Below are positions 12,468-64,000 of a stretch of DNA of 64,000 nucleotides, in pieces. The position numbers were made by a program, and so were the translations under genes. This DNA comes from Euprymna scolopes. Taxonomy: Eukaryota. The stretch lies in assembly GCA_053919585.1 (NCBI GenBank), contig CM132815.1; one strand, 5' to 3'. Position 1 is the stretch's first letter. Each line of letters starts with the position of its first letter. The notes beneath the pieces are model-generated. The model saw only the letters and a list, made by a program, of their open reading frames with translations, was not told the origin of the DNA and made no database searches.

Positions 12468-12547
<80 letters not shown>
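12468..12547. repeat. Compound (CAT)n(TAT)n microsatellite
   Basis: Direct reading. Confidence 0.95.
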
Positions 12548-12548
<1 letters not shown>

Positions 12549-15968: not shown

Positions 15969-16979
15969 TAATTTATCTCATTTGGGTGAGTTCTATATTT
16001 ACAATACAATGGACACTATTTTCATAGAAATGTTAATAAACTCATATTGGCTGTGTGTTATAAGTTTTTCTGTCCAAAAGTTCAGTTCAGATTTCTGTAG
16101 TGGTTCTCGAACTTGGCAAAAAGGTCCCAGAGTTCAAAAAGATGCACTTGAAGAAGATCAGAAGTTACATTGCCCAAAATGTTGTGAAAATAACAACTAG
16201 GTTGAGAATAGTTGTTGAAAAATAGTTTGAAAAAATGCAAATAATACAGATGATAACTTAGTTGAAAGGTTTTGATATTTTGATTCTAATTGAAATCAGT
16301 TTTATAAATTGAATCTTTATGTCGGACTCTGGAATTTGTATGGAATTTTGAAATGATGCTTTTATTCACTCAACTGAGGCAGATTATTAAAAAGAAAGTG
16401 TTGGAGAATCTTTCTTAGACTTTCTTAGACTTAGAAACTTTCGCATCTTGTAAGTAATGCATGAGGCAGTCAAAGCATACCATCGTTTTTTTTTTATGTG
16501 AAACCAGATTCAACACATCTCACCAATTTCTTCCCGATGCAATCAAATCTTTCTTGATTTCTGTTTCCAGTTTGTTTGTGGTCTTCCTTTTCTTTTTCTA
16601 TCAGGGGTTCATTGGAACACTTGGTTGGCAATTTTCTCTGTGGAAAATCTTAGGGTATGTCTGGGCCAACCTAGACATCATTTGCAGATTATTGACGATA
16701 CTACATGTTTGTTAGTGTGGTCTCTCATTTCTTCGTTGATAATTTGATCACTCAATTTAATCTCTATAATCTTTCTAACGCACTTAAAATCAAACGCATC
16801 TAATTTCTTTTCTGGGCTGATTTTGCGATGTTAAGTTTCACTTCCATATAGCAGTGTGGACAAAACGTTGCTGTTATATTAATTCTGAATGTGAATGTTT
16901 TTGTTTCTTCAGATTTTTCAGAATGTTTCACAAATTTCTAAATAATTTAATAAAGTGAATTTTCGTTTTTTTTTTTCAG

Positions 16980-19900
16980 GGCCGAAACCGAACTTGATGC
17001 TTATTCTTGTATTCTACATGCTAACCTCCAAGCCACTGACTATTCACAGCAAAAAAAATCAATATGATATCGGCATATCCAATGAGCCGATTCCACAAAG
17101 ACCCCCATCCCTAATCAGTAAAAAATATTTCATAAGTTCTGCAGCATCAAACGATAAAATACAGAGATTAAATCAAAATAGTGCAGAACAAAGATCAAGT
17201 GACCATTCCATTAAGCAATCGCAATCTGGGGATGTAGAGTCAACATTAAATCGTTCAGAATTAGATGAAGACATTGATTTTAAATTTCAACGGTTCATAA
17301 AAAATAATCATTCCATCTTGCTCACAAATAAACATGAAAGAAATAATAGAGAAAGTTTCTTGATGAATTCTAGAAAAAGTATACCTGTGTATAGTAATCC
17401 TCTTAGAATGGAGCCAATATCTTTTTCAAAAAGTAGAATCTTAGTAAGTAATAGCATAGAGTCGAAAGAAAGAAATGTAAATAGTGTTAAACCTTTGAGT
17501 AAATTATATTCACAGCCTGGCTCAAATATAAAACATATGGCTATTAGACATAGAAGAGTTTCAGATAAGAATTTAAACAAAAATGTCAATTTGATCGATA
17601 CAGTTACAGATAAAAATCTAATGAATAATGTTTTCAAATCCTCAATCAGTTATTTAAAGAATGATGTAAAAAGTAAAATGTCGAGAATAAAATATATAAA
17701 TGCTGAACAAGATGAACTTTTGAAAAAAACGAAAAACTTTTTAATAAAATCATCAATGAATTTTGATACATTAAATCAAAATGAATTTTCAGATAAAAGT
17801 TTTATTAGCCTTCTTGATCTTAAACGACAGCAAAATCATCCATCATATAATTCGCTATCAATAAATTTCAGCAATTCAACTACGAATGTATATTACAAAA
17901 AGGTGTTTTATTTTTATGCAAACAAAAATGAAAGCAAAGATAATCTTCCAATTATTGTTGATAAAAAGAATTTTCAAAGAAATGGTGAGGTTGGCTCAAG
18001 CAGAAATAAAACCAATACGACCGCGAATCAAAAATTGATTCAATTATATGCACCGACACAAAAGAGAAATAATCACGAAATATCCACAGAAATATATTCC
18101 TTGTTTAAAAAAATAAATAATGATCCAAAGGCTCTTTCTTTACCTCAAAGCGCAACTGTGATATCTACGATAGACCAAGATCAAATCGATGTAAATAATG
18201 ATCAAATGTATAAAAGAAGTTCAAATGAATCAGTTGAACCAAACTATAAAAAAAATTATTCCATGTTAAAGAAAGGAGAGAATTTGACTGACAATTCAAC
18301 ACTTCATAGACATTTTATTCAAAAGAGTCAACCAAAACTCAAGAACAGAACTCCATTTAGTCTTGATAAAAAAACGATGACCTTTGTACAGAACATCTTC
18401 AGCAGCAACAAGACGAAGAAAAACAAAAATTCAGTATTTTCTCCATCTAAAGGAATCGTAACAAGCAATAAAACCATAAGCAAAAATGCTTATCGAGCAC
18501 AAATTATTCAACGTAATCATTCCACAACTTCCAGTATATTTCCTATTCCTGTGCCTTCACTCAAATCATTTCATCCTAATATCAAAAACAAATCTTTTGT
18601 GCCTTCCTTGAAGCCTAAGAGTCACAAAACAAACATTACGACATCAAAACAAACATACAGTCATTTGTCAGCATCTAATGTGCCTATAAATATGAATCAT
18701 GACGCGTTTAAACCATTTTTTAATAATTCCTTTTATACAAAAATTACTAATTCAGACAATAACTATAAATCACTTCAATACAGATCAAAACGGAATATCA
18801 TTTCCAAATTTCACAAAGAAATTCAACCTGTAAATAATTATACTCATATCTTGATCCCATCGGACATGCCCGAAAATTCCAAAGATCAGGTTTTATTAAT
18901 AACAAATAGAGAAAACGTTTATATAAATTCTTCCGCATCGATCTTAACAGTTTTTAAAACAGTTAAAATTATGGAAACAGACAACGCAGATTATGACGCA
19001 TACAATGATTGCTTTATGGAAGAATCAACTGAAATGACAGACGTTACAGAAGATACACCTTTAATGTTAAATGATTCGTATCTAAATGATAACGGAAATA
19101 TTTTATCACAGCATAAAAGCGAATGGATTAACGGAGACGTATCATTAAGCGGCAAAGCAAGAAACATTTTAAAAAACCCGTTCAATTCACGGAAAGTTCC
19201 CTATCCTATTTTTCACACAAACCAATTAAGCAAAATTGAGGTATCCCTGCATAACGAGCCGGCAGCTGGTGCTCTCCAAGAAAATGGATCGATTGGAATT
19301 TCCCTTGTGTGTATCCATGGATCAAGTTTTACGACAACTGAAGAAAACATAAATATTACGTTGAATTGTTCTTCATCTGATAACATTGCTCCGAAATCTA
19401 CGGATATAATAGTATCGCTATACTGTAACCCAGGAACCGAGACGAAAACCGACAGAGGAAAGATTTATGTATCCTTATATTGTTTACCTGGAGAAGGGAC
19501 CAAAGGTGAAGGTTCCACAATTCCAGTGAGTCTTCATTGCACAAGTGAATCCGGACATTCGCCATATAAAGAATTGGTCCACGTATCATTATATTGTGCA
19601 CCTGTTAAAAATGAAACGTCCGTATTGGAGGAACAAAGAAATATAACCAAAAAAGAAACGAAATCTTCGAAAGAATTTGAAAAGGCCACCGTGCCGAGAT
19701 CTCGGCATATCTCTGCAGTTACAAAACAAACACTTTTTGTATCTTTAAAATGTACGACTCGACGTGGTTTTTCTGCTGACGGGAAACGCATAGAAGTATA
19801 TGTGCACTGTATGCCCGGACCGATTTCGGAAACTACATTGACGACGTCTTATAGGACACGTAAAATCAAGGCAAGAGATAAAAACGGACGGAAAAAGATA

Positions 19901-22900
19901 TGTCCATACAGACGATGGAAGAAGAAAAGGAAGAAAAAGAAGAAGAAAAAGAAGAAAATATGCCTAAGTGTACCAGAGAGAAAAGTATTTTCACAAACAG
20001 AGTCAACAAAAAAGCCGATTACGTCACAGCGTTTGACCGAAATCAAAATAAGGAAATCGACCAGATTTTCAAACCTGACAAAATTACCAATTATACTGCC
20101 AACTGAAATTGATTCAAAGTTCCAAACAAAGTTACACCCTGCTATCTTATCAAAACATTTGACGAAAACTTTTATAAAACCATCTACTAGATATGCTCAA
20201 AAGGAAAAGAATGTTACTGATGTTTCAATATTTCCTATAAAGCTTCAGACAAAAATTCTAAAACTGGACAATCGAACTCTGATTGAAGATAAAATGAGGA
20301 CAGCAATTACTTACAAGCCATTAACAAAACGGATACACTTATCAACATCTACGCTGCGTAATGGCGAAGAAGTAAGCATGTCAAAATATAAATCAAGCAC
20401 CGTCAAACCAAGCGTCTATTTATGGAAAACAGTTACTTTGTCACAAATAGAGCGTGACCTGAGAGATATGCTAAGGAAAAAGGTTCGACAAAGTTTTTTT
20501 TCTTTCCTAAAAGAAATACCGACATCAGAAGCTAGTAAATCGATAATTCTAAAAATTGTCAAAGGTTCAGAACACCCAACTCTGAGCACATCATCAAAAA
20601 AGCTATTAGTTACATTCACTGAATCTCCGACATCAGCACTAACAACATTAAAACCGAGAAGCATGCGTGCATTTGTGCCTTTTATAACAAGCGCTGATGA
20701 ATTACAATTTCCTATATCATCTGCGACGTCTATGAGAGTTCTTCCAGTAACAACTATTAAACCATCAACAAAAGAACAAACACCAGTGTCAACTCGAAGA
20801 ACACCATTAAAATATACCACAACTCCATCTTCAATAATCACATATAAAATACTGACAATCACACCAAAACCTATTGCAAATTTTACCTTGTTTAGACCGC
20901 TATCACGTAAAATGAAATTACCATTCTTAAAACCACAAACCGCAACTGTAAGAGAGTCTCTCAAGTTTCCATCATCATCATCATCAGCAGCAGCAGCAAC
21001 AGCAACAGCAACAATCAAACCGTTCATACCAGTGACGAGGGTCCCATCTATTGTGAAAACCGTTTCGAAAGAAATACCATTTCCAAGTAAGGCAAGTCGA
21101 AATGAAACCATACCAATCTGGAGGAAATTTGTCGATTTAAAAAGCGAAACGCTGAAATCAACATTAATAGCAAGTAAAATGCCAGAATTAAGCAGGAAAC
21201 TTGCGCCAAGTTTTACATCAGTGTTAAGTAAAGAATCACAACCCTCTTTGAATATGACATCTTTATCTACATCACCTATGCATCGTATGCTGTCAACACT
21301 AAAATCTAGTTTTACAAATATTTCAAAGGGAAGTCGGATTAAAGAGGCAGAACCGACCTTAGTTTATGCAGATGAAATAGTGCAGAAAGAATATACAACC
21401 AAAGATACCAAACAACAAATGACCGATAAAGATACAGGGATGTTGATTACACCGATGCCCCTACGGGCACCCCGTTACGGAGACACAGTTTATCATTTTG
21501 TTGATTTTGATCAAGTTAAAGAACAAGATTTAAGCCGAGACATATCTCCTGAGAAAGACCAATTTACAGAAAGTTATTTTAACACAACAGAAGCAATGGA
21601 TATGAGAGAAACATCATTCGTTGATCTAACAGATGAGCCAACACCTGATGATACGAAGAAAACCACTTACATTGAGAGTACAGAGGATGTGTCTGATGAA
21701 TACTTGATTGGATCTTCAAGTCCTTATATCAAGAGTGATGAATTCTCAACAATCACGCCCATAGATGACCAGGTGGAATCCTCAACTATATCCAGCCGAT
21801 CAAAAGATCTTTCGACTGATCTTGTTTCACAAGATGACCAGATCTTTTCGAAAGCATCAGCAGATCTAATGGAAGAAGATACATTTACTGGTCAAACTAT
21901 TAGCATCGACGAATCGTTTGTTTTTCTCCCTCTTCCAAGCCCTCCTGCACCAACTGAAATGCTGCACGAAACCTTAAAACCTGAAGAATTTTCCACACCG
22001 ACCACAGATGCTGAAATATATAGCAAGAAAGCTGATTTGAAATTGATTTCAACCCCAAAAGATGCTGTGCCATCAAAGACATCATTCAAAGATTTAGCTT
22101 TTACAGACAGCATGAACAAAACACACGGATCCAAACATACAACGGTAATAAAGGACTTAGAAGAAATGGTATCGGAACCAGTTGAAGAATTAAGTTTCAG
22201 TTCTAAATTGCAATCAAAAGATTATTTCTCATCGACAGTTGAGAAATACAGACGTAAATTAATAGATGATGAAAAGCTTGAATTATCAACAAAAGATGAC
22301 TTTTTAACCAAACTTACTGCCTCAAAAAATGTAACTTCAATTAAAACGAAAGCTGCTAAATCAACTGAACCTTCATTTAAAACAGAAACTGCTAAATCGA
22401 CTGAAACTGCTAAATCGACTGAACCTTCATTTAAAACAGAAACTGCTAAATCGACTGAAACTGCTAAATCGACTGAACCTTCATTTAAAACAGAAACTGC
22501 TAAATTGACTGAACATTCATTTAAAACAGAAACTGCTAAATTGACTGAACTTTCATTTAAATTGGAAACTGCTAAATCGACTGAACCTTCATTTAAAACA
22601 GAAACTGCTAAATCGACTGAACCTTCATTTAAAACAGAAACTGCTAAATCGACTGAATCTTCATTTAAAACAGAAACTGCTAAATCGACTGAACCTTCAT
22701 TTAAAACAGAAACTGCTAAATTGACTGAACTTTCATTTAAAACAGAAACTGCTAAATCGACTGAACCTTCATTTAAAACAGAAACTGCTAAATCGACTGA
22801 ACCTTTATTTAAAACAGAAACTGCTAAATCGACTGAACCTTCATTTAAAACAGAAACTACTAAATCGACTGAACCTTCATTTAAAACAGAAACTGCTAAA

Positions 22901-25900
22901 TCGACTGAACCTTCATTTAAAACAGAAACTGCTAAATCGACTGAACCTTCATTTAAAACAGAAACTGCTAAATCGACTGAACCTTCATTTAAAACAGAAA
23001 CTGCTAAATCGACTGAACCTTCATTTAAAACAGAAACTGCTAAATCGACTGAACCTTCATTTAAAACAGAAACTGCTAAATCGACTGAACCTTCATTTAA
23101 AATAGAAACTGCTAAATCGACTGAACCTTCATTTAAAACAGAAACTGCTAAATCGACTGAACCTTCATTTAAAACAGAAACTGCTAAATCGACTGAACCT
23201 TCATTTAAAATAGAAACTGCTAAATCGACTGAACCTTCATTTAAAATAGAAACTGCTAAATCGACTGAACCTTCATTTAAAACAGAAACTGCTAAATCGA
23301 CTGAACCTTCATTTAAAACAGAAACTGCTAAATCGACTGAACCTTCATTTAAAATAGAAACTGCTAAATCGACTGAACCTTCATTTAAAACAGAAACTGC
23401 TAAATCGACTGAACCTTCATTTAAAATAGAAACTGCTAAATCGACTGAACCTTCATTTAAAACAGAAATTGCTAAATCGACTGAACCTTCAATAAAGTAT
23501 TTTGAAAAAAGAGATGTCAGCGATATTGTTGAAAAATCCCATACAAGTACAACTCGGCCATTTACAGACATTATAAGCGTTAAAGCTAATACTACCACTT
23601 TGCCTACTAGTAATCTGGTGCCAACTGCACAAGGAAGCATGACAACATCTAGACCAACAATATCTGTTTTTACTACTGGAACAAGTTCAAATGAGTCATT
23701 AATTGAAATAGTAACACCTTTACCAGAACTCATATCAGTTCATGAAATACCTACCAAGCATATTACAAATGAATCAGAAGTTGAAATTACACAAAAAAAA
23801 GTATCCAAACAATCTGATATACCGACAACATATTCATTATCGCCTGATAAATCACTTTCTATGGTAAAAACAGAGGAGTCCGAGTCGCGTCTATTTTCCG
23901 TCACAATGTCAAAAACTGATTTGTCGACCGAGTTTTTACCTGTGAATGGTACTAAATCTTATACAACATTAACTGAATCAACCAATATCAGTTTTGTAAC
24001 TACACCATCCACAGTCGATTCGGATGGTCCTCTCAGTACATTATATAGTAAAAATGAAAGTATAACCCCAAGATCTATAGAAACATTACCTTCTAGTGTT
24101 AAATTGGAAATTGCGCCTTCTAACTTAACAAAATCTATACTAAAAAGCGAAACACAATCAGCAGTACCAACATCGACATTACAAACATTAAGCACTGCAG
24201 AAGTTTTATTAAAACCATATACAACACAATTAGTTTCCGATGTGGAAAGTGACTCTACGATTATAAAATCTCTAATCTCAAGTACAGTAAGTAAATTATA
24301 TTCAGATTACAGTAAATTAACAAGTGATTCACCATTTTCATCTTCAAATCTGCTATCAAGTAAGAAAAATGGAAGTGTGCTTAAAACAGATATCTTTACT
24401 TTAGAAAAGACAAGCCAGACTCCAAATGTAAGTATCTTATCAAAAGTGACCAGATCAATTGGAAGCAGCCCCACTGAAGATCAAACGCATGGATTTGAAA
24501 CTGACTTTTTAATTTCGCTAACAAAAACTGGTAGTTTAAAACCTTCATTCTTGACATCAAAACCTGTATCAGTGACCAAACTGACACAAGAATCAAGCCA
24601 AAAAGAAATTCATACAAATCTCACACAGCAAACAGAATCCCCAATAATTCTGATCGATTTGACAGCAAAGCCTTATGAGCAAACTGATCATTTGATGATG
24701 ACAAGTAAAAAAGCAACAATTGGCACACAATTGGCACTTGAACCAACAATGCAAAGCTCAAAATTATTAAGTTTGACCTCATCAGAAAAACTTCTGAGAA
24801 AGGATTTAGACAGTTCAAAAGATCACAAAATAGAAATTGCCTCATCTACTACAACTGACACACCATCAGAATTTGAACAGAAAATGTTGACCACAGATAA
24901 ATCAGAAATCCCTAGTAGTAAGAGAACAAAACTCAGCTCAAAGATGGTACAAGATTTTATATCATCAGAAAAAACTTTTACAAAAGATCAAGATGGTTTC
25001 TCAACTGAAAAAACAGTTTCGAAACATGAAAAATTTCAAACACAAAGAATAACATTGGTTACAGACAAAGCACAAAAAGAAATTCTCGCATCTCTTACAA
25101 ATCAAACGGCAGATCTTATAACTTCAATAACAAAACCTTCTACACAACTTGATAGTTTAATGATTGCGAGTGAAAAATCAGTTTTGAAACCTAAAGTATT
25201 TGAAACGGAAACAAAACCAGTGCCGACTGACAGTTCAGATATAGTTAGCTCTGAACCAACGATCAAAAGCTCAAAATTATTACAAGGTATGACTTCACCT
25301 GAGAAAACTTCAACAAAGGATGTGGACAGTTTAATAGATTTCAAAATAGCAATGACTTCATCTACTGAAACTGCAACTGATGCACAACCAAGTTTTGAAT
25401 GCGATATAATGTGTGCTACACCAGCCGTGGAGGTAGATACTTCTACCACTGCTGAAGATCTATCCATTTCTACTCATATTTTATCTGCAGCTGATCTGGA
25501 TGGTTACCAAAGGCAATTGACGTCGATATCAACAATCACGCAACCAGAAAAGACATTATTTACCAAGACAGTTGATTCAACAACTTCTTTATTAAGTTCA
25601 ACTAAAACACCAACAATCGATAGAAGTGCTACATCAACAGTTAGAGTAGATACTTCTGTGGCCGCTCAGAAACTAACCAGCCAAACTCCTATTTTGAGTT
25701 GGATCGATAGGGAAAAACAGGTGACTGCAATACCACATGAAATGACGTCAGAATCAATAGAAACTGCAACAACCAGAAAAATGACACTGTTTACAAAGAA
25801 AGATGACCCAACGACATCTTTAATAAGTATACAAACGAACGAAGTTGATACAACATCAGATTCAGTCTCTATTCCACAAAAAGTCATGTTAGAAAGCGAA

Positions 25901-28900
25901 ATACAAAATACAACAACTATGATGACAACTAATATAACATCTTTTTTCACATCTAAACAAAAACGCATGCCTACAATGGATGCATTTCAGATGCACATAT
26001 CTGCAACGCCTGATAAAAACGACACTGGTGTTCCTCTGTTTCAAACAACAAAAACTGAGGAAGTTGATACATTTCCAGCTTTAGTCTCTACTCAACAAAC
26101 AGACATGTTAGAAAGCAAAGTACAAACTACAACAGCTATGATGAGCACTAATATAACTGATGCCGAACCAACCAGATCATCAACAACTGAAATGAAACCT
26201 TCACCAACAGAGGAGCTAGTTTTCACACAACTTCCCCTTAATAAAACAGTCTCACTACTGTCTTCACATCAAAGCATTTTAAGTAATGCTAGCATGCCAG
26301 TTGATAGAATACATACTAAAGGTCAAACACATCCATTCAAAACTGACTTTGCTGACTCAACAACAATTACAGATAGTTTTAAACCTTCAGTATCCACATC
26401 AACACCTCTAAGTAATATTAGCTTATCAGTTGATACCATTCTTCCTGAAGAACAAACATATTCAGTCAAAACTGATTTTGTAGACTCAACCATTTCAGGT
26501 AGTTTAAAACCAGTATCAACAACTCTAAGTAAGACTAGTTCGTCAACTGATAGTATTCTCATCCAAGAACAAACAAATAGATTCAAGACTGACGTCAAAA
26601 CAGATAGTTCTAAACCTTCGGTAGTCACTTCAACACCTCTACATAATTCTAGTTTGTCAGTTGATAGCATTTTCACTCAGGGACAAACACATACATTCAA
26701 AACTGACTTGATAAATTTCTCAACAAGAACAGATAGTTTTAAACCTTCAGTATCTACATCAACACCTTTAAGTAATGCTAGCTTATCAATTCATATTGAA
26801 TCGTCATCTCATAGTCCCAAACCATCAGTATCCACATCAAAAATTAGATTGACCAAAATGACAAGTCAATCAACAAATACAGACAGTTTTAAACCTTCAG
26901 TATCAACACCTTTAACTAACACTAGCTGGTCTGTTGATACTATTCCCATTCAAGAACAAGCACATTCATTCAAAACTGACCTTGTCGATTCTTCAACAAA
27001 TGCCGACAGTTTCAAACCTTTAATCAGCACATTAATACCTCTATCAAAAGATACAGTAACTAAAATGACAAGGGGATCAACACTAAAAACTGAACTAATA
27101 GACGCAACTACAAATGATTTTACAGATCAAATAGTAAAGAAAGAATTTCACAAAAAATTAACAAAAGAAATTCAGAGTTCAACGACTCTTGAAGGTTACT
27201 TTACATCTTTAAAGTTACAAAATATCACATACGGTTCAACAACACAATCTGCTGAACCTAGTAGTTTAATTTTAACTAAAAAAGACTTTTCAGAATATGA
27301 ACTCTCAAAAACAGAGAAGAAAACACTAACCTCAGGTGAAACAGATTCATTTAGCGCTGAACCAACAATTCCTCATTTAAAACTGTTACAACGTCCGATG
27401 TCATCTGAAAGAACTCCTACAATAGACCAAAATGGTTTAATGGACCAGAAGCTTTCGACAGTTGAGACGACAACAGCGTTCAATGTGAAGCAAAGCTCGC
27501 CATGTGACGTTATGTGCGCTCCACCAGCAGTGGAGGTTGATACTTCGACCACGGTTGGAGGACTCTCTATTCTTACGACTGCCTTAAGCACGGTTGATTT
27601 GGTTGATGTAGAAAAGCAACCAGTTAAAGTGATACATGAAAGCTCATCCAGATTAAAGTATGCATTAACGACTCCATCATCACCAGAAAAAACAACAACA
27701 GGGAAAATTGAATCAACAAAATCTTTGTTAAACCCAACTGTAATAACAGAAACGAAGGCAGGTAAAGTAACTGACATTGATCAAACAGAAACAATCCCGC
27801 TTGAAAGAGAAACTCTTCCAAAAGAAAATCAATATATGTTAAGTAAAGCTGATATATCTACATCTGCACTGACAAGAGATCATGAGTCAGAGAAAGATGC
27901 AACTGAAATCTCTAGTCAACAAATGTTACCTACTGAAACAGACGATAGGGCAAGGCAACTGGAGCGTAAAATAGCTGCAATAGATGCATTTAATGAGAAT
28001 CGAACCAAAGTTCCTGCATTTGAAACAGTAAAAGATGTGTCAACAATTCAACACGACAGAAATGCGTCATTACAGCTTTCCTTTCAACCAACACAATCGG
28101 TTGATACGACCTCATCTGCATCACAAATAGAAAACAAAATATCAGATACAACACTGGCCACTAACATAACTTCTTTATCTACATCTGGTGAAACACTGAC
28201 TCACATTACTGACACACAACTGAGCAGCGAAATAAAAACTTCACCAACAGGCAGGCAATTTGTCACACGAAAATCATTTCCCAATAAAACATTCCAACTA
28301 ACTACTGGGATAAGCATTTCACCTACCGCCCCAATGTCGCCTGAGACGATTCTTATTAAGGAAGATAGGCACGTGACCAAAACAGATTTTGTAGATTCGT
28401 CAACAAGAAATGATGGCATTCACACAAGTCAAACCATAATTTCAGCTTTAAAAGATGATGCGTTAGAAAAACAAACGGAAATTCCAACTTCTACGCAGAC
28501 AAGTAAATCTTTAGTTACACCTGAACAACTAAACATTGAAACTGAACCGACCATGCCAATCATGGCTCAAACCTCCTCAACTGATTCATCAACACAAATA
28601 TCAATTATTAATGAAACATTCGCATTAAACATCACAAAGTCATTTGATTCGATTCTCACTCAAGAGCAAACGCATTCATCTCAACCTGACTTTGTAGTTT
28701 CATCGGTAAAGGAAGACAAGCTAAAAGCTTCAAAACTTATGTCAACAGATATGTTTACCAAAATGACGACTGAATCAACTCTGGAAACTAAACTACCAGA
28801 CTCCAAACATCTGTCAACTGATATAATAACCAACATGACAGAATTGACTTCTATTTCCACATCAAAGTCTCTGCAAGCCAACGGAGTAAGAACCCTAAGA

Positions 28901-30104
28901 AAATTAACCTCGGAAGCTCAAACACCAGATTCAACTATAATAATGCGTGATTTCACTGATCAAACAGTGAAGGAAACCCAAATAGATGAGAAACGAATTC
29001 CACCTTCAACAAGTGAAATTGATATCAAATCTACAATGATTCAGAAGTCTCCTTCAACTGATCCTGTGCACATGACAGAAATACAGTCACAAGCAAGAAA
29101 ACAGAATTTATCGGACAAAAGTATGTATCAAGTTGAAAAGAAATTAACAACTGTACCTGAATCACGTGAACCTCGGTTATCTCATTTGTACACTGACCGA
29201 ATAGTTTCAGAAAGCAAAGCAATGAATGAGACATTAAAATGGGATCCAATGGTTTTTGCATTTTCTTCAACTGAAATGATTCGTTCATCGAGTCGAGGTG
29301 GAATGAGCTCTACACCATTCGAAACAACAATGGTTAAAATGACTACAACGACACCGGCTGGAGGAAAATTAACGGGAATTTTAGAAAAGAAAATGAAAGC
29401 ATCGACACTTAGCACAGATATTACGGATTCTTTAATAAGTGGTTCGACTTTTCTAGCAAGAGACAAAAGAGTAATTAATCAAACCAAAGCACATATTTCT
29501 CAGATTAGTTTACCAGGCACAACCGATCAAACATTGTTGATGCTGCCTGAAACAAGCACAACTTTACCAGTGGGAGAATCGTCATCGTCGTCATCATCAT
29601 CATCAACATCATCTACATTATCATCATTGACAACAAAAACTGGAGTGGAGCCTGGTATGCTTTCACTCACAGATCCATATACTGATCCATCATCAGTAAA
29701 ATTTGTGCCAGAAACCAAAAAGCTACAGACGACAACAACAACAACAACAGACACGAGATCATCATCATCGTCATCAACAATTGATATAAATCTTTTCAGC
29801 GATAAAGATGAAACAAAAACTCAAAGTCAAGAATCTCATATTTTGGAAGAATCAGTATCAAAAGAAGGAATCACTTTAATTCCACGAGTGACAAAAGTTG
29901 AATCAGAATTGAGAAAAGAACTAAAAGACATGAAACAAGAAATGTTGGAAGCGGAAAAAGATTTTATACAAACTGAGTCTGACAAACATATCGCAACGAC
30001 GAAACGTAGCAAAATCTTTTTTGATCCGAGGAAAACTGATTTTATATCTACTCTTAAAACTGATGATTACTTTGCAGATCTAACACAGGCAACACCTGAA
30101 ACTG

Positions 30105-30144
<40 letters not shown>

Positions 30145-54100: not shown

Positions 54101-57100
54101 GTAGCAGTTTCAAAAAGCCCAGTATCAGCATCCGAAATGAAAACACACATCACAAACATATTGGATACACTTAGCATTAAACCAACAAGCCAAATACCAA
54201 TGATTTCAACAATGCAGGCTGCAACAATGGAACAAGAAAGCTTACTCACTGAAAAGCCAGTTTCAAAAAGTGAGGTATCAGTTTCCGCAATAGAAGAGAT
54301 TAAAGACCCTGTCACAGCCACGCCGGACACACTTAGCACCGAACTAGTAGCATCAACACTTTTACAGCATCTGCTTTCAACAGTGAAAACTCCAACAGTG
54401 GAAAAAATAAGTTTATCCACAGAAGAAAACGTTTTCAAAAGTGAGGTAACAGATTCAAAAACTAAAACAACAATCACTGACAGATTGGATGCAGTAATCA
54501 TTGAACCAATGAAAGATATCCGAGCACTGTCACAAGATCTGATTTCCACAGTTCCAACCTCAACAATGGAACAAGAAAGTTTGGCAAAAACAGTTTCGAA
54601 AAGTGGGACTTCAGAAATCAAAAAACATGTTAAAGACATATTGGATGCACTTAGCACTGGACCGACGAGACAAATACAAACACTATTACAAGACGTGATG
54701 CCAACAATTGAACAAGGAAGCTTGTCCACTGATAAAATTGCTTCAAAAACGGAGGTATCAGTTTCAGAAATGGATGCACACATGACAGGCACATCGGATG
54801 TTTTAGTAACCAGATCCACAACACAAATATCCACAGATCCGATTTCAAAAGGGAAAGCACCAACACTGGAACAAGATAGTTCATCAACTAAAAAAACAGT
54901 TTCAAAAACTGTTGTATCAAGTTCAGAAATGAAAATGCACGTCACAGATGCATGGGATACGGTTAACAATACATTAACAAAACAAACAGCAACAGCACTA
55001 AGAGATCCGATTATTAAACTATACATTCCAATAATGGAACAAGAAAGTTTGTCAACTAAAAAAACACATGTGAAACTACAAACAGAAACTGAAACACCTA
55101 TTACCGACGAATTAGATTTGTTTCACACTCAGACTACAAAAAAACCTTCAAAATTATTGCATGATATGATTTCACATGGGAAAATTCCAACAACACATCA
55201 GGAAAGTTCTATTGATGAGAAAATCACAACAGCTTTGACACCAGCTGTAACTGATACACAACCAAGTCCTGATTGTGATGTCCTCTGTGCTACACCAGCA
55301 GTAGATGTAGATTCTTCAACAATAACTGAGGAATTATCTGTGATAACATCTACCACAACCAAAATGGATTTGGCTAGTTACCAACAGGTCACCATGACAC
55401 AAAAAAACTCATCAGTATCAACTGATATTTTAACGACACCAACTACAAATGAGACAGTATTTTCTACAGAAACAGTTGGCTCATCATCATCATTAGATAG
55501 GAGAACAAGAAAATCAACTTTATTGCAAGATGTTATTTCAACAGCGCAACCATCAACAATTGATCAAAAAAGCTTGCCAACAGGAATAAAGGATAGGAAA
55601 ACTGACAGATCGTTATCAGAAAGCGGAACGCATATCATGGGCACAATGGATACAAGCTTCGAACCAACGACACAAATATCAACAGAAATACAAGATTTTA
55701 TTTCAACAATGAGACAAGAAAGTTTGTCAACTGATAAAACAGTTTTAAAAAGTGAGCTACTATCTTCAGATATCAAAATGCATATCACAGGCACATTGAA
55801 TGCATTTGGAAACAAATCAACGTTGCAACCTCCAACAATTGATCAAAAAAGCTTCTCAATGGAAAAACCAGTTTCAGGTTTTCAAATGATCACACCAATC
55901 ACTGAAAAAGTGTATATAGTTGGTTCTAAACCAACAACACAAATATCTACGGAAAGACAAGATCAGATTTCAACAGTGCAAACTCCTACGATGAAACAAG
56001 ACCGTTTGTCGACTGATAAAAACATTTCAAAAATTGAGTCATCTGTTTCAGAAATGGAAACACACGTCACAGATATATTTGATCCATTTAGCACTGTGTT
56101 AACAAAACAAGTATTAACAGAGTTACAAGGTCTGACTACAATAGTCCAAAGTCCAACATTAAAACAAGCAAGATTGCCAACTTCAAAACCTGTTTCAAAA
56201 TATGTAGAATTACAAACTCCAACACTTGAAGCAGAAAGTTTGTCAACTGGAAAAATTGCCACAAAAAATGATATATCAGAATCAGAAACCGAGAAATTAA
56301 TCACCGATAGACTAGAGACACTGAGAACAAAACCAGCAAAACAAACCTTAAAAATATTGCAAGATCTGATTTCCACAATTGATCCAGAAAGTTTGCCGAC
56401 CGAAAAAACAGTTTTGAAAAGTGAAAACACAACTTCAGAAACAAAACCAATAATAACAGACATCTTGTATAGATTTAGCTCCAAACCGAAGAAAAAAATA
56501 TCAACAATATTACAAGATCTGATTTCAACAGTGCAAACGCCAAGAAGTGATCAAGAAAGTTTGTCAACTGAAAAAACAGTTTCAGAAATGAAAAAAAGTG
56601 TCACAGACATTAAACGAAGGACACAACCAATGTTAGTTTTGCAATATCTGTTTTCTACAGAACCAACCCCAACACTGGAACAGGAAAAAAAGAGAGAGGT
56701 ATCAACTTTGGGAATGAAAGCACTTATAACAGGGCAATCCCCAAGAAGTGAACAAAAAAGTTTGCCAACTGAAAAAACGGATTTGAAAAGTGAGGGAACA
56801 ACTTCAGAAATTAAAACACGAATAACGAACATATCCGATATATTTAAACAAACAACACAAATAACAGAATTACAAAGCATGATTTCAACAATTGAAACTC
56901 CAACGATTAAAGAAGAAAGTTTGTCAACTAAAAAGACTTTTCCGAAAAGTGGGGTATCTGCTTCTGAAATGAAAACAGGTATCACAGACGCATTGGATAA
57001 ACTTAGCACCAAACCAATGACACACATAAGAACACCTTTACAGTATCTGTTTTCAACAGAACAAACTCCAACACCACAACAAGAAAATAAGACAGCTTCA

Positions 57101-60100
57101 AAAAGTGAGGCATCAACTTCGGAAATAAAAGCACTAATAATGGACATCTTGGATACACTTAGCATTAAGCCAAGGACACAAATAGGAACAGATATACAAG
57201 ATCTAATTTCAACAGTAAAAATTCCAACATTTGCATCAGCTAGTTTGTCAACAGAACCAACAGTTTCCAAAAGCCAGGAAGTAGGTTCAGAAATAAGAAC
57301 GGACATTTGGGATAAACTTAGCTTTAAATCCAAGAAACAAATATCAACAACGTTACAAGATCTCATTGCAAAATTGCAAACTGTGACAATTGAACAAGAC
57401 AGTTTCTCAACTGAAGAAACTTTTTCAAAAAAGAATATATCCGTTTCAGTAATGAAAACACATGTCACAGACACATTTGATTCACTTAGTACTAATCCAA
57501 GAACACATATAACAACAGATCTACAAGATCTGATTTCAACAAGACAAGCACCAAAAGTTAAACAAGAAAGTTTGTCAATAGAAAAACATGTTTCAAAAAG
57601 TGAGGTATCACAATCAGAAATAGAAACACACGTCACAGAAACACCTAGAAGTAAACCAACAACACAAAGAGCAACAGAATTCCAATTACAAGACTTTATT
57701 TCAAAAGAGCAAACACCAACATCAGAACAAGAAAGTTTATCAACTCCAAAAATAGTTTCAAAAAGTGAAACATCAGTTCCGGAAATGAAAGCACATGTCA
57801 CAGACACATTGGATATGGCTAGCGCAAGGCCATCAACAGAATTACAGGATCTGATTTCGAAAGTTCATTTTTCAACATTGAAAGAAGAAGGTTTGCCGAC
57901 TGAAAAATCTGTTTCAATGATTGAGAAACTTAAAATAGAAACTGCAACAGCAGTTACTGACAAATTAGATAGATTTAGCACTCGAACAAGAAAGCAAACT
58001 TCCAAATTATGGCATGATATGATTGCACCTGCAAAAACCTCAACAACACATTCAGACAGTTCTACTGATGAGAAAATAACAACAGCCTTGACGTCAAGTG
58101 TAACTGATTCACAGCCAAACACTGATTGTGATGTTCTCTGTGCTACACCAGCAGTAGATTCAGATTCTTCTACTATATCTGAAGAATTATCCATTCTAAC
58201 TTCTACCACAACCAAAATGGGTTTGGCTGATTATGAACAGCTACATGCTAACATGACACAAGAAAACCCATCAGTGTCAACCGATATTTTAATGGCACCA
58301 ACCACAAAGGAAGAAACACTTCCTATGTTGTCAATGACTTCAAAAACATCTTCCATTGCAAACATATCAGCAGTACTACAAGATCTTAGTTCAACACTCC
58401 AAATATCAACAATGAGACAAGAAAGTTTTCCCACTGATAATACAATTGTGGAAGGAGAATTGGCCATTTCAGAAATGAAAACACACGTAACAGACTCATC
58501 AGCCATGCCTAGTAGTATGCCAATGATGCAACTTTCAACAGAATTAAAAACTCCAATTCCAACTTTACAAACTCCAACGATGGAAAAAGAAAGTTTATCC
58601 ACTGATAAAACAGTTTTGAAAGATGGGGTGTCAATTACAGAAATAAAAACACATACCACAGACACATTGAAAATACTTAGCACTACACCTATGACTCACA
58701 TATCGACAGAATTGCCAAATATAATTTCAACTTTACAAACTTCTACAATGGACAAAGAAAGTTTAACAACTTATGGAACAGCTTTGGAAGATGAGGTGTC
58801 AGTTAGAGAAATAAAACCATATGTCACGGATACATTGGATACACATCGCACTACACCAATGACATACATATCGAAAGATTTTCAAGATATACATTCAACT
58901 TCAGAAACCCCTACATTACACAAAGAAAATTTGCACACTGATAAAACAATTTTGAAAAATGAGGTGTCGGTTACAGAAATAAAAACACATGTCATGGACA
59001 CATTTGATACAATTAGCACTACACCAATAACAAGCATGTCCACAGAATTGCCAAGTATAATTTCAACTTTACAAACTCCAATAATAGAAGAAGAAAGTTT
59101 CTCCACTGCTAAAACAGTTTTGAAAGATGGAGTGTCAATTACAAACACATTGGATATGTTTAGCACTATACCGACAAACATATCGACAGAATTTCAAGAT
59201 CTGATTTCAACTGTACAAACTAGTATGATAGACAAAGAAAGTTTACACACCGATAAAAGTGTTTTGAAAGATGAGGTGTCAGTTACGGAAATAAAAACAC
59301 ATGTCACGGACACATTGGTTGCATTTAGAACTGCACCAACAACACAATTATCAGCAGAATTTCAAGATCTGATTCCAACTTTAGAAACTCCTATGTTAGA
59401 CAAAGGAAGTTTACACACTGATAAAACTGTTTTGATAGATGGGGTGTCAGTTACGGAAATAAAAGCACATGTCATGGACACATTGGACACGCTTAACACA
59501 ACAGCAACAACACACATATCGACAGAATTGTCACAAAAAAATTTAACTTTACAAATTCCTACAATGGAAGAGGACAGTTTATCCACAGAGAAAACTGTTT
59601 TGAAAGATGGGGTTTCAGTTACAGAAATAAAAACGCGTTTCACAGATACATTGGATATGCTTAGAACTGCACCAATAACACACATATCAGCAGAGTTTCA
59701 AGATCTAATTTCAACTTTAGAAACTCCTACATTAGACAAAGAAAGTTTACACACTAATAAAACTGTTTTGTCACATAAAATTCCAACTTTACAAACTCCA
59801 ACAATAGAAGAAGAAAGTTTATCCACTGATAAAACAGTTTTGAAAGATGGAGTGTCAATTGCAGAAATAAAAACACATGCCACAGACACATTGGAAATAC
59901 TTAGCACTATACCTATGACTCACATATCAACAGAATTGCCAAATATAATTTCAACTTTAGAAACTCCTACATTAGACAAAGAAAGTTTATACACTGATAA
60001 AACTGTTTGGAAAGATGGAGTGTCAGTTACAGAAATAAAAACACATGTCACGGACAAATTAGATACACTTAGCACTACACCAATGGCACAAATATCGACA

Positions 60101-63100
60101 GAATTACCAGATATAATTTCAACTTTACAAACTCCTACAGCAGACAAAGAAAGTTTACACACTGATAAAACTGTTTTGAAAGATGAGGTGTCAGTTACAG
60201 AAATAAAAACACATGTCACAGACACATTGGATATGCTTGGCATTACACCAACGACACATATATTAACAGAATTGCCAAGTATAATTTCAACTTTAGAAAC
60301 TCCTACAACAGACAAAGACAGTTTATCCACAGAGAAAACTGTTTTGAAAGATGAGGTGTCAATGACAGAAATAAAAACGCATGTCACGGACACATTGGAT
60401 ACGCTTAGAACTGCACCAACAACACACATATCAGCAGAGTTTCAAGATCTGATTTCAACTTTAGAAACTCCTACATTAGACAAAGAAAGTTTACACACTG
60501 ATAAAACTGTTTGGAAAGATGGAGTGTCAGTTACAGAAATAAAAACACATGTCACGGACAAATTAGATACACTTACCACTACACCAATGGCACAAATATC
60601 GACAGAATTACCAGATATAATTTCAACTTTACAAACTCCTACAACAGACAAAAAAAGTTTACACACTGATAAAACTGTTTTGAAAGATGAGGTGTCAGTT
60701 ACAGAAATAAAAACACATGTCACGGACACATTGGATATGCTTGGCATTACACCAACGACACATATATTAACAGAATTACCAGATATAATTTCAACTTTAG
60801 AAACTCCTACAACAGACAAAGACAGTTTATCCACAGAGAAAACTGTTTTGAAAGATGAGGTGTCAGTTACAGAATTAAAAGCACATGTCACAAACACATT
60901 GGATAAGCTTAACACAACATCAACGACACACATATCGACAAAATTGCCAAGTATAATTTCAACTTTAGAAACTCCTACACGAGACAAAGACAGTTTATAC
61001 ACTGATAAAACAGTTTTGAAAGATGAGGTGTCAGTTATAGAAATGAAAACACAAGTCACGGACACATTGGATACGCTTAGCACTACACCAATGACACACA
61101 TATCAACAGAATTACAAGATATAATTTCAATTATACAAACTCCAGCAATGGAAGAAGGTAGTTTATCAACTAAAAAAACGCATATCAAACTACATTCAAA
61201 AACTGAAATGCCAATTACAGACCAATTAGATAGATTCATCACTCAAACAAGAAAGCAAACTTCGAAATTATTGCGTGATATATTTTCACCAAGACAAACT
61301 ACGACACCACACCTAGGGAGTTCTGTCGATGAGAAAATAACAGTAGCCTTTACATCAGCTGGAACTGATCCGCAGCCAAGTCTGGTTTGTGATGTACTCT
61401 GTGCTGCACCAGCAATAGACGTAGATTCTGCAACCATATCTGAAGAACTCTCCATTCTAACTACCACAACTAAAGATGGTTTGGCTGATTATGAACAGCT
61501 ACTGATTAATATGACACAAGAAAATGGCACAAAGTCAACCAATACTTTAATGACATCAACTGCAAATGGAAAAACACTTTCTATGGAAACGGTTGATTCA
61601 CCAGCATTTTTGTTAGCCAGTGACACGTTAAAAGAAGATTTGATTTTCACTGAGCAAACACCTACAAAAAGTTTTTCAACTGTAAGCACAATTTCGAAAA
61701 ATGACGTATCATTTTCCGAAATCGAAGCGCATATCACAAATATATTAGGTTCACTTTCCTCTAAATCAACAACACAAATATCAACTCCTATAGCAGACCA
61801 AGTTGCAAGAGCACAAACTTCAACAATGAGACAAGAAAGTTTACTTTCGGATAAAACACTTTCAAAAAGTGAGTTACCATCTTCAAGACAAGAGAGTGTG
61901 TCTACTGAAAAAACAACTTCAAAGAGTGAGGTAATATCTTCAGAAACCCAAGCGTATACAACAGACACATTGGATACATTTAGCATGCAAACTACACAAA
62001 TACCGATATTATTACAAGTCCTGACTTCAACAGTTAAACCACCAACTATGGAACAAGAGAGTGTGTCTACTAAAAAATCAGATTATCAGAGTGAGGTAAT
62101 ATTTTCAGAAATCCAAGCAAATATCACTGACACTTTGGATACACTTAGCACTAAACTGCCAACACAAATATCAACAATTTCACAAGATTTCGTTTTGACA
62201 ATGCAAGCCGCAACAGGAGAACAAAAAAGTTTGTTCATGAACAAAACAGACTTCATACATGAGTTATCATCTTCAGACATGAAAACACATGTCACAGACA
62301 CATTGGATGTGCATAGTACTCAGCCATCTGTTACAGAAAGTAAAACACATGTCACAGACACCTTTGATGTGCTTAGTACTCAATCAATTAAAGAAAATAA
62401 AACACATGCAACGGACGTATTGGATACACTTACTACTCAACCATCAGTCACAGAAAGTAAAACACATGTCACGGACACATTGGAAGAGCTTAGTACTCAA
62501 CTGAAAGTTTCAGAAAGTAAAACACATGTCACAGACACATTTGGTATGCTTATTACTCAACCATCAGTTACAGAAAGTAAAATACATGTCACAGACACAT
62601 TGAGTGTCCTTAGTACTAAACCGTCAGTTACAGATACTAAAACACATATAACAGACGCGTTAGATGTGCTTAGTACTCAACCATCAGTTAAAGAAAGCAC
62701 AAAACATGTCACAGACGCGTTAGATGTGCTTAGTACTCAGCCATCAGTTACAATAAATAAAACACACATCATGGACGCATTATTTACAATTAGTACTCAA
62801 CCGTCAGTTACAAAAGGTAAAACAAATATCACGGACACATTTGATGTACTTAGTACTCAGCCATCAATTACAGAAAGTAAAACACTTGTTAAAGACAAAT
62901 TGGATACACTTCCAACTAAACCATCAATTACAAAAATTAAAACACATGTCACAGACACATTGGATACACTTAGTATTCAAACATCAGTCACAGAAAGTAA
63001 AACCCATGTTACAGATACATTGGATGTGATTAGTACTCAACCATCAGTTACAGAAAGTAAAATATCTATAACGGACACATTTGATGTGCTTCGTACTCAA

Positions 63101-64000
63101 CCGTCAGTTACACAAAATAAAACCCATGTTACAGGCACATTGGATGTGCTTAGTTCTCAACCATCAATTACAGAAAATAAAACATATGTCACAGGAACAT
63201 TGGATACACATAGCACACAACCATCAGTTACAGAAAGTACAACATCTATCACGGACACATTTGGTTTGTTTAGTACTCAACCATCACTTTCAGAAAATAA
63301 AACACATGTTAATGACACATTGGATGAGTTTAGTGCTCAACCCTCAGTTACAGAAAGTAAAACACATGTCACGGACACATTTGGAACACTTAGTACTCAA
63401 TCAACGGCACAAATATCGACTGAATTAGATATCCTGATTCCAACAATTCACACGCCAATGACTGAGCATGAAAGTTTATCTACTGACAAAACCGTTTCCA
63501 AAAGTGAGATATTTATTTCAGAAAGACATTTCACAGACACATTGGATATGCTTAACACTGCACCAGAATTACAAATTCCGATTTCAACTTTACAAACTCC
63601 AACAACGGAACAAGAAAGTTTGTTCACTGATAAAGAGGTTTCAAAAAGTGAGGTATCCGTTTCAAAAAAGAAAACACGTGTCACAGACACATTAAATACA
63701 ATAAGCACTAAATCAACGTCACAAATCTTAACACTTTTACAAGATACGATTTCTACAGTTCAAGCTCCAATATTCAGACGAGGAAAATTTTCAACAGTTA
63801 AACCCATTTTGGAAAGAGTGATATCTGCGGCAGTCATAACGACACCAATAACAGAAACTTTGGATAGAACTAGCATGAAATCAACAGAACAAATGTCCAC
63901 AGAATTACAAGATCTGGTTACAACACAACAGTTGGCGTTAGAACAAGAAAGTTTATCCAGTGAAAAAAACGTTTCAACTGAAATGCTAATGACAGACACA
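16980..64000 (+). CDS. Giant single coding exon (3' partial) of a probably secreted mucin-like T/S/E/K-rich protein, >=15,600 aa
   Basis: Polypyrimidine+CAG acceptor (ttttttttcag|G at 16979/16980). Frame reads PKPNLMLILVFYMLTSKPLTIHS (ATG 16997). Manual translation of many lines from 17 to 64 kb stays in this frame without stops and ends ...EKNVSTEMLMTDT at 64000. The ORF track has no + ORF in this frame, as expected only if there is no stop before the window end. All measured repeat units are multiples of 3. Confidence 0.92.
19235..19812 (+). repeat. Cryptic 19-aa (57-nt) protein repeat, I-x-V-S-L-x-C, 9 units
   Basis: Cys codons at 19310, 19367, 19424, 19481, 19538, 19595 (each +57), then 19751 and 19808 (+57). 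The first unit has Asn at 19253 (-57). Confidence 0.85.
22352..23490 (+). repeat. 36-bp coding minisatellite, ~30 copies (TETAKSTEPSFK)
   Basis: Unit acagaaactgctaaatcgactgaaccttcatttaaa, near-perfect. Confidence 0.95.
25363..26480 (+). repeat. Long intra-exonic duplicated block (copies at ~41670-42520 and ~44165-45020)
   Basis: Near-identical sequence, e.g. cagccaaactcctattttgagttggatcgatagggaaaaacagg at ~25678, ~41725 and ~44482. The ORF track shows matching antisense peptides. Confidence 0.9.
32250..32745 (+). repeat. Duplicated block, second copy at ~38220-38720
   Basis: Near-identical, including QPDFECDFLCATPAVELDT. Confidence 0.85.
33810..35050 (+). repeat. 72-bp coding tandem repeat, ~17 copies (AESSLRTRMPDSKLLSTDTITNVT)
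   Basis: Direct reading. Diverged units also occur at ~31.8, 37.6-38.0 and 40.0-40.2 kb. Confidence 0.92.
48660..49460 (+). repeat. ~800-bp duplicated block, second copy at ~57490-58290 (offset 8832)
   Basis: Antisense ORFs 49033..49383 and 57865..58215 are almost identical. Confidence 0.9.
50625..52040 (+). repeat. 165-bp coding tandem repeat, ~8.5 copies (55 aa)
   Basis: ESLTIDKTVLKDGLSITEIKPRVTDALDTLTTTPMIQISTELPDIISTLQTSTDK. Confidence 0.92.
58540..61170 (+). repeat. 168-bp (56-aa) coding repeat array with a 504-bp higher-order duplication
   Basis: Diagnostic variant gtttggaaagatgg at 60005 and 60509 (offset 504 = 3x168). Confidence 0.85.
62280..63400 (+). repeat. 60-bp coding tandem repeat, ~18 copies (KTHVTDTLDVLSTQPSVTES)
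   Basis: Units align vertically in the 60-nt lines. Confidence 0.92.

What the first reader, a model, noticed from the sequence alone, without database searches (positions are those of the whole stretch)
16980..64000. Hidden >=47-kb uninterrupted coding exon encoding a >=15,600-aa mucin-like giant protein
Seen: a single + frame opens at a canonical acceptor (16980) and has no stop wherever I translated it, up to base 64000. The ORF track reports nothing in this frame, which implies no terminating codon. The many minus-strand ORFs are its antisense shadow. Established: the largest well-known human coding exons (MUC16, TTN) are about 20 kb, so this one is at least twice as long and still unfinished. 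Inference: it encodes a secreted structural glycoprotein (mucus, egg-case, adhesive or matrix) that automated annotation would probably fragment or miss.
Basis: partly seen in the sequence, partly recalled or inferred. Interest (0 to 1): 0.95.

Follow-up and report, generated by a model that had tools for sequence, protein, structure and literature searches.

The report
Giant 47-kb repeat-protein coding exon
One real, transcribed and spliced exon runs stop-free for at least 47 kb and encodes at least 15,674 residues of a threonine/serine-rich, disordered, probably secreted protein with no detectable relatives; its size is striking but falls within what long-read work now reports for mucin-type exons.

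Summary
Observation confirmed. The + frame is open from 16946 to 64000: 15,685 codons, 0 stops, about 1,100 expected from composition. A spliced transcript contig joins foreign 5' sequence exactly at the acceptor at 16979/16980.

The product is at least 1.74 MDa, with T 16%, S 13%, 25% charged residues and only 39 Cys. AlphaFold2 models it as disordered.

It is more than a simple VNTR. A unique N-terminal 1,200 aa carries 19-residue Cys-periodic repeats. At least 14 old super-repeats of 700-1,087 aa follow (cores 23-86% identical). Each has one invariant C-D-x-L-C-A-x-P-A-x-x-x-D motif, kept despite synonymous codon changes.

Elsewhere the sequence evolves almost neutrally (omega about 0.7-1), but indels are in frame and no stops occur.

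No homologue or Pfam domain was found in four protein searches. Only 2% of 100-aa windows meet the classical PTS criterion, so it is mucin-like by analogy only.

Expression is sample-specific. The size is not a record: a 2026 preprint reports human MUC12 alleles of 23,080 aa.

This scan noted other giant mucin-like genes on other pieces of this genome, but not this locus on other DNA.

Verdict: a real new member of a known kind, of moderate interest.

The parts
16966..16979 (+). Polypyrimidine tract (11 T) and CAG splice acceptor
   Evidence: Sequence read. The spliced X2 contig's match starts at 16977, the 3 nt CAG being shared with the end of the upstream exon.
16980..64000 (+). Giant coding exon, phase 1, open to the window end (47,021 nt; at least 15,674 codons)
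   Evidence: 0 stops against about 1,100 expected. RNA contigs are continuous over 16977-22299. Run X2 holds 0.78 of the sampled words at 17000-21000 and 0.82 at 54001-64000.
16980..17050 (+). Signal-peptide-like N-terminus; the ATG lies 7 nt before the donor of an upstream exon outside the window
   Evidence: The loose end of the X2 contig gives an in-frame ATG GCA G, then the exon: M-A-G-P-K-P-N, a 10-residue hydrophobic run, then T-S-K-P. Inference; no signal-peptide predictor was available.
16980..20545 (+). Unique N-terminal region (about 1,190 aa), N/K/S-rich, 29 N-x-S/T sequons
   Evidence: No internal repeat hits in self-BLAST; composition; sequons.
19010..19963 (+). Cys-bearing block: 11 Cys, six at exact 19-residue spacing (x-V-S-L-x-C), ending in a poly-K run
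   Evidence: AlphaFold2 puts strands at roughly 19-residue spacing but at pLDDT 42, so the fold is not established.
22335..23491 (+). 32 copies of a 12-aa unit (P-S-F-K-T-E-T-A-K-S-T-E)
   Evidence: TRF period 36, 93% matches; translation.
25400..61426 (+). 14 core motifs C-D-x-L-C-A-x-P-A-x-x-x-D, one per super-repeat; first Cys codon at 25400, 27503, 30161, 32576, 35729, 38552, 41084, 44204, 47009, 49295, 52316, 55274, 58127, 61388
   Evidence: alignment A1: C, C, A, P, A, D invariant. Synonymous codon variation at the invariant residues. Cores are 23-86% identical pairwise.
33801..35053 (+). 17 copies of a 24-aa unit
   Evidence: TRF period 72; translation.
50423..50620 (+). Fifteenth core lead-in, truncated just before the position of the first Cys and joined to the 55-aa array
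   Evidence: lead-in homologous to the other cores up to Q-P-S-S-D, then the array begins.
47291..63910 (+). Zone dominated by 55/56-aa units: 93 HMM matches, including partial matches to the 20-aa units of the 62282-63400 array. Arrays at 50625-52069 (95% alike), 58555-61143, and the 20-aa derivative at 62282-63400
   Evidence: TRF; hmmsearch with a unit profile; translations.

Best explanation
This is a genuine, transcribed giant exon: the second or a later exon of a gene whose preceding exon lies at least 17 kb upstream, outside the window. It encodes at least 15,674 residues (at least 1.74 MDa before modification) of a lineage-restricted, secreted, intrinsically disordered T/S-rich polyampholyte. 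Shown: the open frame, the splice junction, RNA presence at both ends of the exon, the hierarchical repeat architecture, selection that keeps the frame and composition but barely the sequence, strong conservation of one short Cys motif per super-repeat, and the lack of any detectable homologue or domain. Inferred: a signal peptide directs it into the secretory pathway, where the roughly 4,600 Ser/Thr residues are heavily O-glycosylated into an extended, hydrated chain several micrometres long. The N-terminal Cys block and the C-x3-C motifs, spaced about 700-1,090 residues apart, would serve as regularly spaced disulfide or metal cross-link points that tie chains into a gel, glue or fibre network. 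In working principle this resembles the CysD modules between PTS domains of gel-forming mucins and the Cys-containing regions of Chironomus Balbiani-ring proteins. My probabilities: real giant coding exon 0.9; secreted 0.7; glycosylated gel or adhesive role 0.55; C-x3-C as cross-link point 0.4.
For: Open frame. About 98 new stops would be expected from only 4% unconstrained divergence, and about 600 at the divergence seen between paralogues. Splicing and transcription. Runs X2 (23 M letters) and X3 (129 M letters) are too small to hold most of the gene unless it is abundant RNA. Two deep polyA runs, X21 and X24, had no reads in the exon, and X21 is from the same study as X3, so expression is sample-specific. 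Architecture. Motif under purifying selection. Relaxed sequence constraint with the frame kept: 5 synonymous to 20 nonsynonymous differences to organism C against a 20% neutral expectation, with only +3 and +6 indels listed in the exon; paralogue omega 0.68-0.75. Disorder: pLDDT 35, pTM 0.12 with a 14-row alignment. No TM-like segment; pI 5.4; 203 N-glycosylation sequons. Mucins are a functional rather than evolutionary class that arises repeatedly through exonic repeats (PMC9417175).
Against: Only 2% of 100-aa windows meet the usual PTS criterion. Median S+T is 30%, Pro is 4.7%, and 27% of residues are hydrophobic, so bottle-brush glycosylation is assumed, not shown. The signal peptide rests on a 30-nt loose-end consensus that is itself open upstream, so the true start may lie further 5'. 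No predictor was run. The C-terminus is unseen, so a membrane anchor or further domains cannot be excluded. Continuity in RNA was checked directly only over 16977-22299. The copy number of the most homogeneous arrays (22335-23491, 50625-52069) was not checked against long reads. Runs X2 and X3 are labelled RNA only by guess, although X2's contig is spliced.
Confidence: 0.7

Rival explanations
1. Polyprotein precursor. The super-repeats are released as separate glycopeptides of about 80-120 kDa by cleavage at or near the conserved core, as profilaggrin is cut at linker peptides. The conserved motif would then be a processing or recognition site rather than a cross-link.
For: One short, strictly conserved motif per unit amid freely drifting sequence is what a processing site would look like. 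Unit sizes are fairly regular, 701-1,087 aa.
Against: The invariant residues are two Cys, Ala, Pro, Ala and Asp, with no basic or dibasic site. Only 4 R-x-K/R-R sites occur in the whole protein, and none lies at a core. Units differ greatly in internal repeat content.
Confidence: 0.1
2. Transcribed, but length or continuity is overstated. Some arrays are mis-sized by the assembler, or stop-free introns are removed, so the mature message and protein are substantially shorter than the open frame suggests.
For: Two arrays are 93-95% homogeneous. RNA continuity was seen directly only for the first 5.3 kb. X3 holds only 0.48 of the distal words.
Against: Most internal duplicates are only 65-85% identical in DNA, which is easy to assemble. 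Independent samples hold 0.72-0.82 of the distal 31-mers. An intron of any length in 35% G+C sequence would almost certainly carry stops: the other frames are open for about 11 codons on average.
Confidence: 0.08
3. Non-secreted giant scaffold (cytoskeletal, nuclear or cell-cortex protein such as AHNAK-type repeat proteins), with the hydrophobic N-terminal run being incidental.
For: Composition is not classical PTS: 25% charged and 27% hydrophobic residues. A few low-confidence helices appear in the model.
Against: The N-terminus is signal-like, directly after a good-context ATG. There are 203 N-x-S/T sequons. Cys is nearly absent except in conserved pairs, a pattern typical of extracellular proteins. 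Expression is strongly sample-restricted and abundant.
Confidence: 0.07
4. Chance or non-coding open frame in a compositionally biased repeat.
For: The sequence is A-rich and repetitive, and antisense open runs of up to 630 codons arise as by-products.
Against: 0 stops against about 700-1,100 expected. Codon-position composition is strongly asymmetric. Only in-frame indels are listed against a related species. Motif residues are invariant despite synonymous variation. A spliced transcript exists.
Confidence: 0.01

Closest known systems
Vertebrate mucin VNTR exons (human MUC12, MUC16, MUC4)
   Same: One very large exon of in-frame tandem repeats encodes a Ser/Thr-rich disordered chain. Sequence constraint is relaxed while the frame is kept. 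Sizes are comparable: MUC12 alleles reach 23,080 aa and the longest MUC4 VNTR-exon allele is 27,843 bp (PMC13345508).
   Different: No sequence similarity and no SEA, VWD, CysD or other mucin domain in the part seen. S+T is only about 30% and Pro 4.7%, below the PTS norm. The repeats are hierarchical and old (super-repeats of 700-1,087 aa) rather than one homogeneous VNTR.
Chironomus Balbiani-ring secretory protein genes (BR1, BR2.1, BR2.2, BR6)
   Same: Genes of about 40 kb with few introns and a repetitive central part of about 35 kb (PMC4192438). They encode MDa secreted proteins. From my own knowledge, their repeats alternate a Cys-containing region with a sub-repeat region, the closest analogue to the core-plus-array layout here. 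Expression is gland-specific and abundant.
   Different: BR units are less than 100 aa with 4 Cys each (my recollection, not tested here). Here the units are about 10 times longer with a single C-x3-C. A different phylum, and no homology detected.
Spider aggregate-gland glue spidroin AgSp1
   Same: A giant repetitive secreted glycoprotein with 42,270 bp of coding sequence in very large exons (PMC6553539).
   Different: AgSp1 is split into two exons of about 21 kb and carries the conserved spidroin N-terminal domain; its C-terminal region is named in PMC6553539, and that it is conserved is my recollection. No Pfam domain of any kind was found here.
CysD modules of gel-forming mucins
   Same: Conserved Cys-containing elements interrupt long glycosylated stretches at intervals and are thought to set network cross-links. 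The CysD cross-linking role is from my own knowledge; PMC4948705 supports only that CysD domains occur in gel-forming mucin architectures.
   Different: CysD is a folded domain of about 100 aa with many Cys (my own knowledge). Here the element is a 13-residue motif with two Cys in a region modelled as disordered.

Membership tests
Mucins in the broad functional sense (PTS-repeat glycoproteins) | PTS domain: Ser+Thr at least 40% and Pro usually above 5% (PMC4948705) | tested here: not met
   Only 31 of 1,559 windows of 100 aa (2%) meet both. Median S+T is 30% and overall Pro is 4.7%.
Mucins in the broad functional sense (PTS-repeat glycoproteins) | Repeats encoded by one large exon of in-frame tandem repeats (PMC13345508) | tested here: met
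Mucins in the broad functional sense (PTS-repeat glycoproteins) | Secreted or membrane-tethered (signal peptide) | tested here: inconclusive
   Signal-like N-terminus reconstructed from a 30-nt transcript loose end plus the exon start. No predictor was run, and the true start is not proven.
Mucins in the broad functional sense (PTS-repeat glycoproteins) | Dense O-glycosylation of the repeats | not testable with these tools
   Needs glycoproteomics or lectin and PAS staining of the purified protein.
Gel-forming mucins | N-terminal VWD-C8-TIL units, CysD, C-terminal CTCK | tested here: not met
   No Pfam match across the 15,685 translated residues. The C-terminus lies beyond the window and is unseen.
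MUC16-type tethered mucins | Tandem SEA domains | tested here: not met
   No SEA match in Pfam scans. The super-repeat is modelled as disordered.
Spidroins / fibroins | Conserved N- and C-terminal spidroin domains | tested here: not met
   No Pfam match in the N-terminal 1,200 aa. The C-terminus is unseen.
Balbiani-ring secretory proteins | Sequence homology of the Cys-containing region and sub-repeats | tested here: not met
   The core-motif profile found 0 proteins at E of 0.001 or better among 1.84 billion representatives. The three word-indexed searches also found nothing. The resemblance is architectural only.

The most novel reading that the evidence does not exclude
The gene defines a new, lineage-restricted class of multi-megadalton secretion protein. 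Its material properties would be set by a regularly spaced 13-residue C-x3-C cross-link or metal-binding motif, one every 700-1,090 residues, rather than by canonical PTS bottle-brush domains. Its exon, still open at 47 kb, would be the longest transcript-supported coding exon yet documented outside vertebrate mucins.
Probability: 0.25. Interest if true: 0.65.

Novelty: new member of a known kind. Interest (0 to 1): 0.45.

Why it matters
This is a clean, transcript-supported example of how far a single coding exon can grow, at least 47 kb and 1.7 MDa of protein. It also shows selection that guards the reading frame, the composition and one tiny motif while the rest drifts.

For genome annotation it is a test case: no corresponding protein model was found in very large protein collections.

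For biomaterials and invertebrate secretion biology, it offers a candidate backbone protein. Its evenly spaced Cys motifs are a directly testable hypothesis for how the mesh size of a gel or glue is encoded.

It is not a conceptual surprise. Giant repeat exons of secreted glycoproteins are known from human mucins, midge Balbiani-ring genes and spider glue.

Tried and rejected
- **Pfam.** Scans of the whole translated exon in four pieces gave only sub-threshold noise.
- **Exhaustive profile search.** The 14 core motifs against 1.84 billion representatives gave 0 hits.
- **Word-indexed homology searches.** Three queries found nothing: a 10,000-aa query, the N-terminal 1,200 aa and a 964-aa repeat zone.
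- **ESM Atlas.** Two feature searches gave best scores of 0.68 and 0.79, below any useful level.
- **PDB.** The profile search gave nothing.
- **Rfam and tRNA scans.** The window gave nothing.
- **Upstream exon.** A search of the window for the transcript's 33 nt gave no match with up to 3 mismatches, so that exon lies outside the window.
- **AlphaFold2 on the Cys-periodic block.** Confidence was too low (pLDDT 42) to support or reject a beta-solenoid.
- **Viral or transposon polyprotein.** Considered and rejected. The only reverse-transcriptase matches lie upstream at 9924-10709, and the composition and repeats are unlike any polyprotein.
- **Organism.** I did not try to decode the organism behind the coded run labels.
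Full report
**Observation**

- The + frame in register with base 16946 has no stop codon up to the last base of the window. That is 15,685 codons.
- The stretch is 41% A and 25% T. Base composition predicts about 1,100 stops, and a codon-position model about 709.
- The two other + frames of the same stretch carry 1,215 and 1,353 stops and stay open for about 11 codons on average.
- Codon positions differ sharply in composition. G is 8% at position 2 and C is 35% there.
- The frame is entered at a textbook acceptor: 11 T followed by CAG, ending at 16979.

**Transcription and splicing**

- Two small runs of the same coded organism hold most of the sampled 31-mers at both ends of the exon.
  - X2 (23 M letters): 0.78 at 17000-21000 and 0.82 at 54001-64000.
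  - X3 (129 M letters): 0.77 and 0.48.
  - Runs this small can only hold the gene if it is abundant RNA.
- At the 95% setting, X3 has depth 0 over 16179-16966 and 3-33 from 16967 onward.
- A 3,961-nt X2 contig lies on 16977-20584 and is preceded by 341 nt that do not lie on the stretch. Its last 33 nt are absent from the whole window.
  - The preceding exon is therefore at least 17 kb upstream.
- In frame, that loose end reads ATG GCA G and then continues into the exon.
  - This gives M-A-G-P-K-P-N, a ten-residue hydrophobic run, then T-S-K-P.
  - It looks like a signal peptide behind an ATG with A at -3 and G at +4.
  - This is inference. The 30 known letters are open upstream of the ATG as well, and no predictor was available.
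- Two deep polyA runs, X21 and X24, had no reads in the exon. X21 belongs to the same study as X3, so expression is strongly sample-specific.
- RNA contigs are continuous without joints over 16977-22299. Beyond that, continuity rests on the open frame and on word shares.

**The protein**

- Composition: T 16.4%, S 13.3%, K 8.9%, L 8.4%, E 7.3%, I 6.7%, D 6.3%, P 4.7%. There are only 39 Cys and 23 Trp.
- The part in the window weighs 1.74 MDa, has pI 5.4, 203 N-x-S/T sequons and no transmembrane-like segment.
- The first 1,200 residues or so are unique and N/K/S-rich.
  - They hold a block of 11 Cys, six at exact 19-residue spacing in an x-V-S-L-x-C context, followed by a poly-K run.
- At least 14 super-repeats follow, spaced 701-1,087 residues apart.
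  - Each has one motif, C-D-x-L-C-A-x-P-A-x-x-x-D, in which C, C, A, P, A and D are invariant.
  - The 180-residue cores around it are only 23-86% identical. There are three recent pairs and otherwise old copies.
  - The invariant residues use different synonymous codons in different copies. The motif is therefore held by purifying selection, not by recent homogenisation.
- A fifteenth lead-in at 50423-50620 stops just before the position of the first Cys and runs into a 55-residue array.
- Between the cores lie arrays of units:
  - 12 residues (32 copies),
  - 24 residues (17 copies),
  - 55/56 residues (a unit profile gave 95 matches in all, 93 of them in the last third, including partial matches to the 20-residue units),
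  - 20 residues (19 copies).
- Internal DNA duplicates are mostly 65-85% identical. This argues against a collapsed or inflated assembly, except possibly for copy number in the two arrays that are 93-95% homogeneous.

**Selection**

- A 3,104-nt DNA contig of a related organism (X7) spans the intron-exon boundary with 124 substitutions, about 4%.
  - The only exon indels listed are +3 and +6.
  - The 25 listed exon substitutions split 5 synonymous to 20 nonsynonymous. That matches the 20% synonymous fraction expected with no constraint.
- Paralogous super-repeats give omega of 0.68-0.75.
- 7,343 single-base changes would create a stop. Even 4% unconstrained divergence should have produced about 98 stops.
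- Selection therefore keeps the frame open, keeps the composition and keeps the Cys motif, but hardly constrains the rest. This is the signature of a long disordered, probably glycosylated, chain.
- AlphaFold2 agrees.
  - A 400-residue super-repeat segment with a 14-row alignment gives pLDDT 35 and pTM 0.12.
  - The Cys-periodic block gives strands at roughly 19-residue spacing, but at pLDDT 42, which establishes nothing.

**Relatives**

- None was found. The negative searches were:
  - Pfam;
  - the exhaustive core-profile search of 1.84 billion representatives;
  - three word-indexed searches, including one tuned to models of 5,500-17,500 aa;
  - the Atlas;
  - PDB.
- Related organisms B to F carry near-identical DNA. 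They hold 5-31% of the 31-mers, and measured identity to organism C is about 96%. The gene is shared at least within a narrow clade.
- Other agents of this scan call the genome molluscan. I did not verify this.

**Interpretation**

- The best reading is a secreted, heavily glycosylated, disordered giant chain.
- Its N-terminal Cys block and evenly spaced C-x3-C motifs would provide cross-link or metal-binding points for a gel, glue or fibre.
- In principle this is like CysD modules in gel-forming mucins, or the Cys regions of Chironomus Balbiani-ring proteins.
- It is not a canonical mucin. Only 2% of 100-aa windows reach S+T of 40% with Pro of 5% (criterion from PMC4948705), and no mucin domain is present.
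- Mucins are a functional, convergent class that arises through exonic repeats (PMC9417175). 'Mucin-like by analogy' is therefore the right label.
- Rivals, all less likely, are a filaggrin-like polyprotein, an overstated length, and an intracellular scaffold.

**Size in context**

- Published figures:
  - the longest Drosophila exon is 27.7 kb (cited in PMC3563967);
  - spider AgSp1 has two exons of about 21 kb (PMC6553539);
  - Chironomus BR genes have a repetitive central part of about 35 kb with only four introns (PMC4192438);
  - a 2026 preprint reports human MUC12 alleles of 4,677-23,080 aa with a 55,233-bp range in the central exon (PMC13345508).
- The exon here, at least 47,021 nt and unfinished, is among the largest documented. 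It is of a known kind and within the known range.

**Verdict**

- This is a new, orphan member of the class of giant repeat-exon secretion proteins, with an unusual super-repeat and motif architecture.
- Interest is moderate.

Noticed in passing
window 9924-11112 (+) and 4134-4412 (+): Degraded non-LTR retrotransposon. Reverse-transcriptase fragments match Pfam RVT_1. A second copy of the same element's 3' ORF tail lies at 4134-4412, 62% identical over 79 aa. Both lie in the intron upstream of the giant exon, in the same orientation as the gene.
   Followed up: partly
window 15000-16100: A very high-copy repeat family. Summed contig depth reaches about 100,000 in RNA run X6, with many loose ends and pseudo-joints. 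It is probably an abundant, transcribed SINE or other transposon family in the intron.
   Followed up: no
window 12188-12548: Three adjoining perfect trinucleotide microsatellites, (TGA)19, (TCA)13 and (TAT)14. The first gives a spurious poly-His ORF on the minus strand.
   Followed up: no
window 50423-50620: A partial fifteenth core. The conserved lead-in is present up to the residue before the first Cys and is then replaced by the 55-aa array, apparently a recombination breakpoint inside the exon.
   Followed up: yes
window 17930-18615: One contig of the related organism C (X7) skips 684 nt here, with 28 other letters in between. Only 22 letters lie on the shorter side. It may be an allele, a paralogue or an assembly artefact in that species.
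   Followed up: no
window 19913-19960: A run of about 16 Lys (A-rich homopolymer-like tract) inside the coding exon, directly after the Cys-periodic block. Read-laying skipped it as a repeat. Such poly-A tracts in a coding frame are known to slow ribosomes (my own knowledge). Its tolerance here is unexplained.
   Followed up: no
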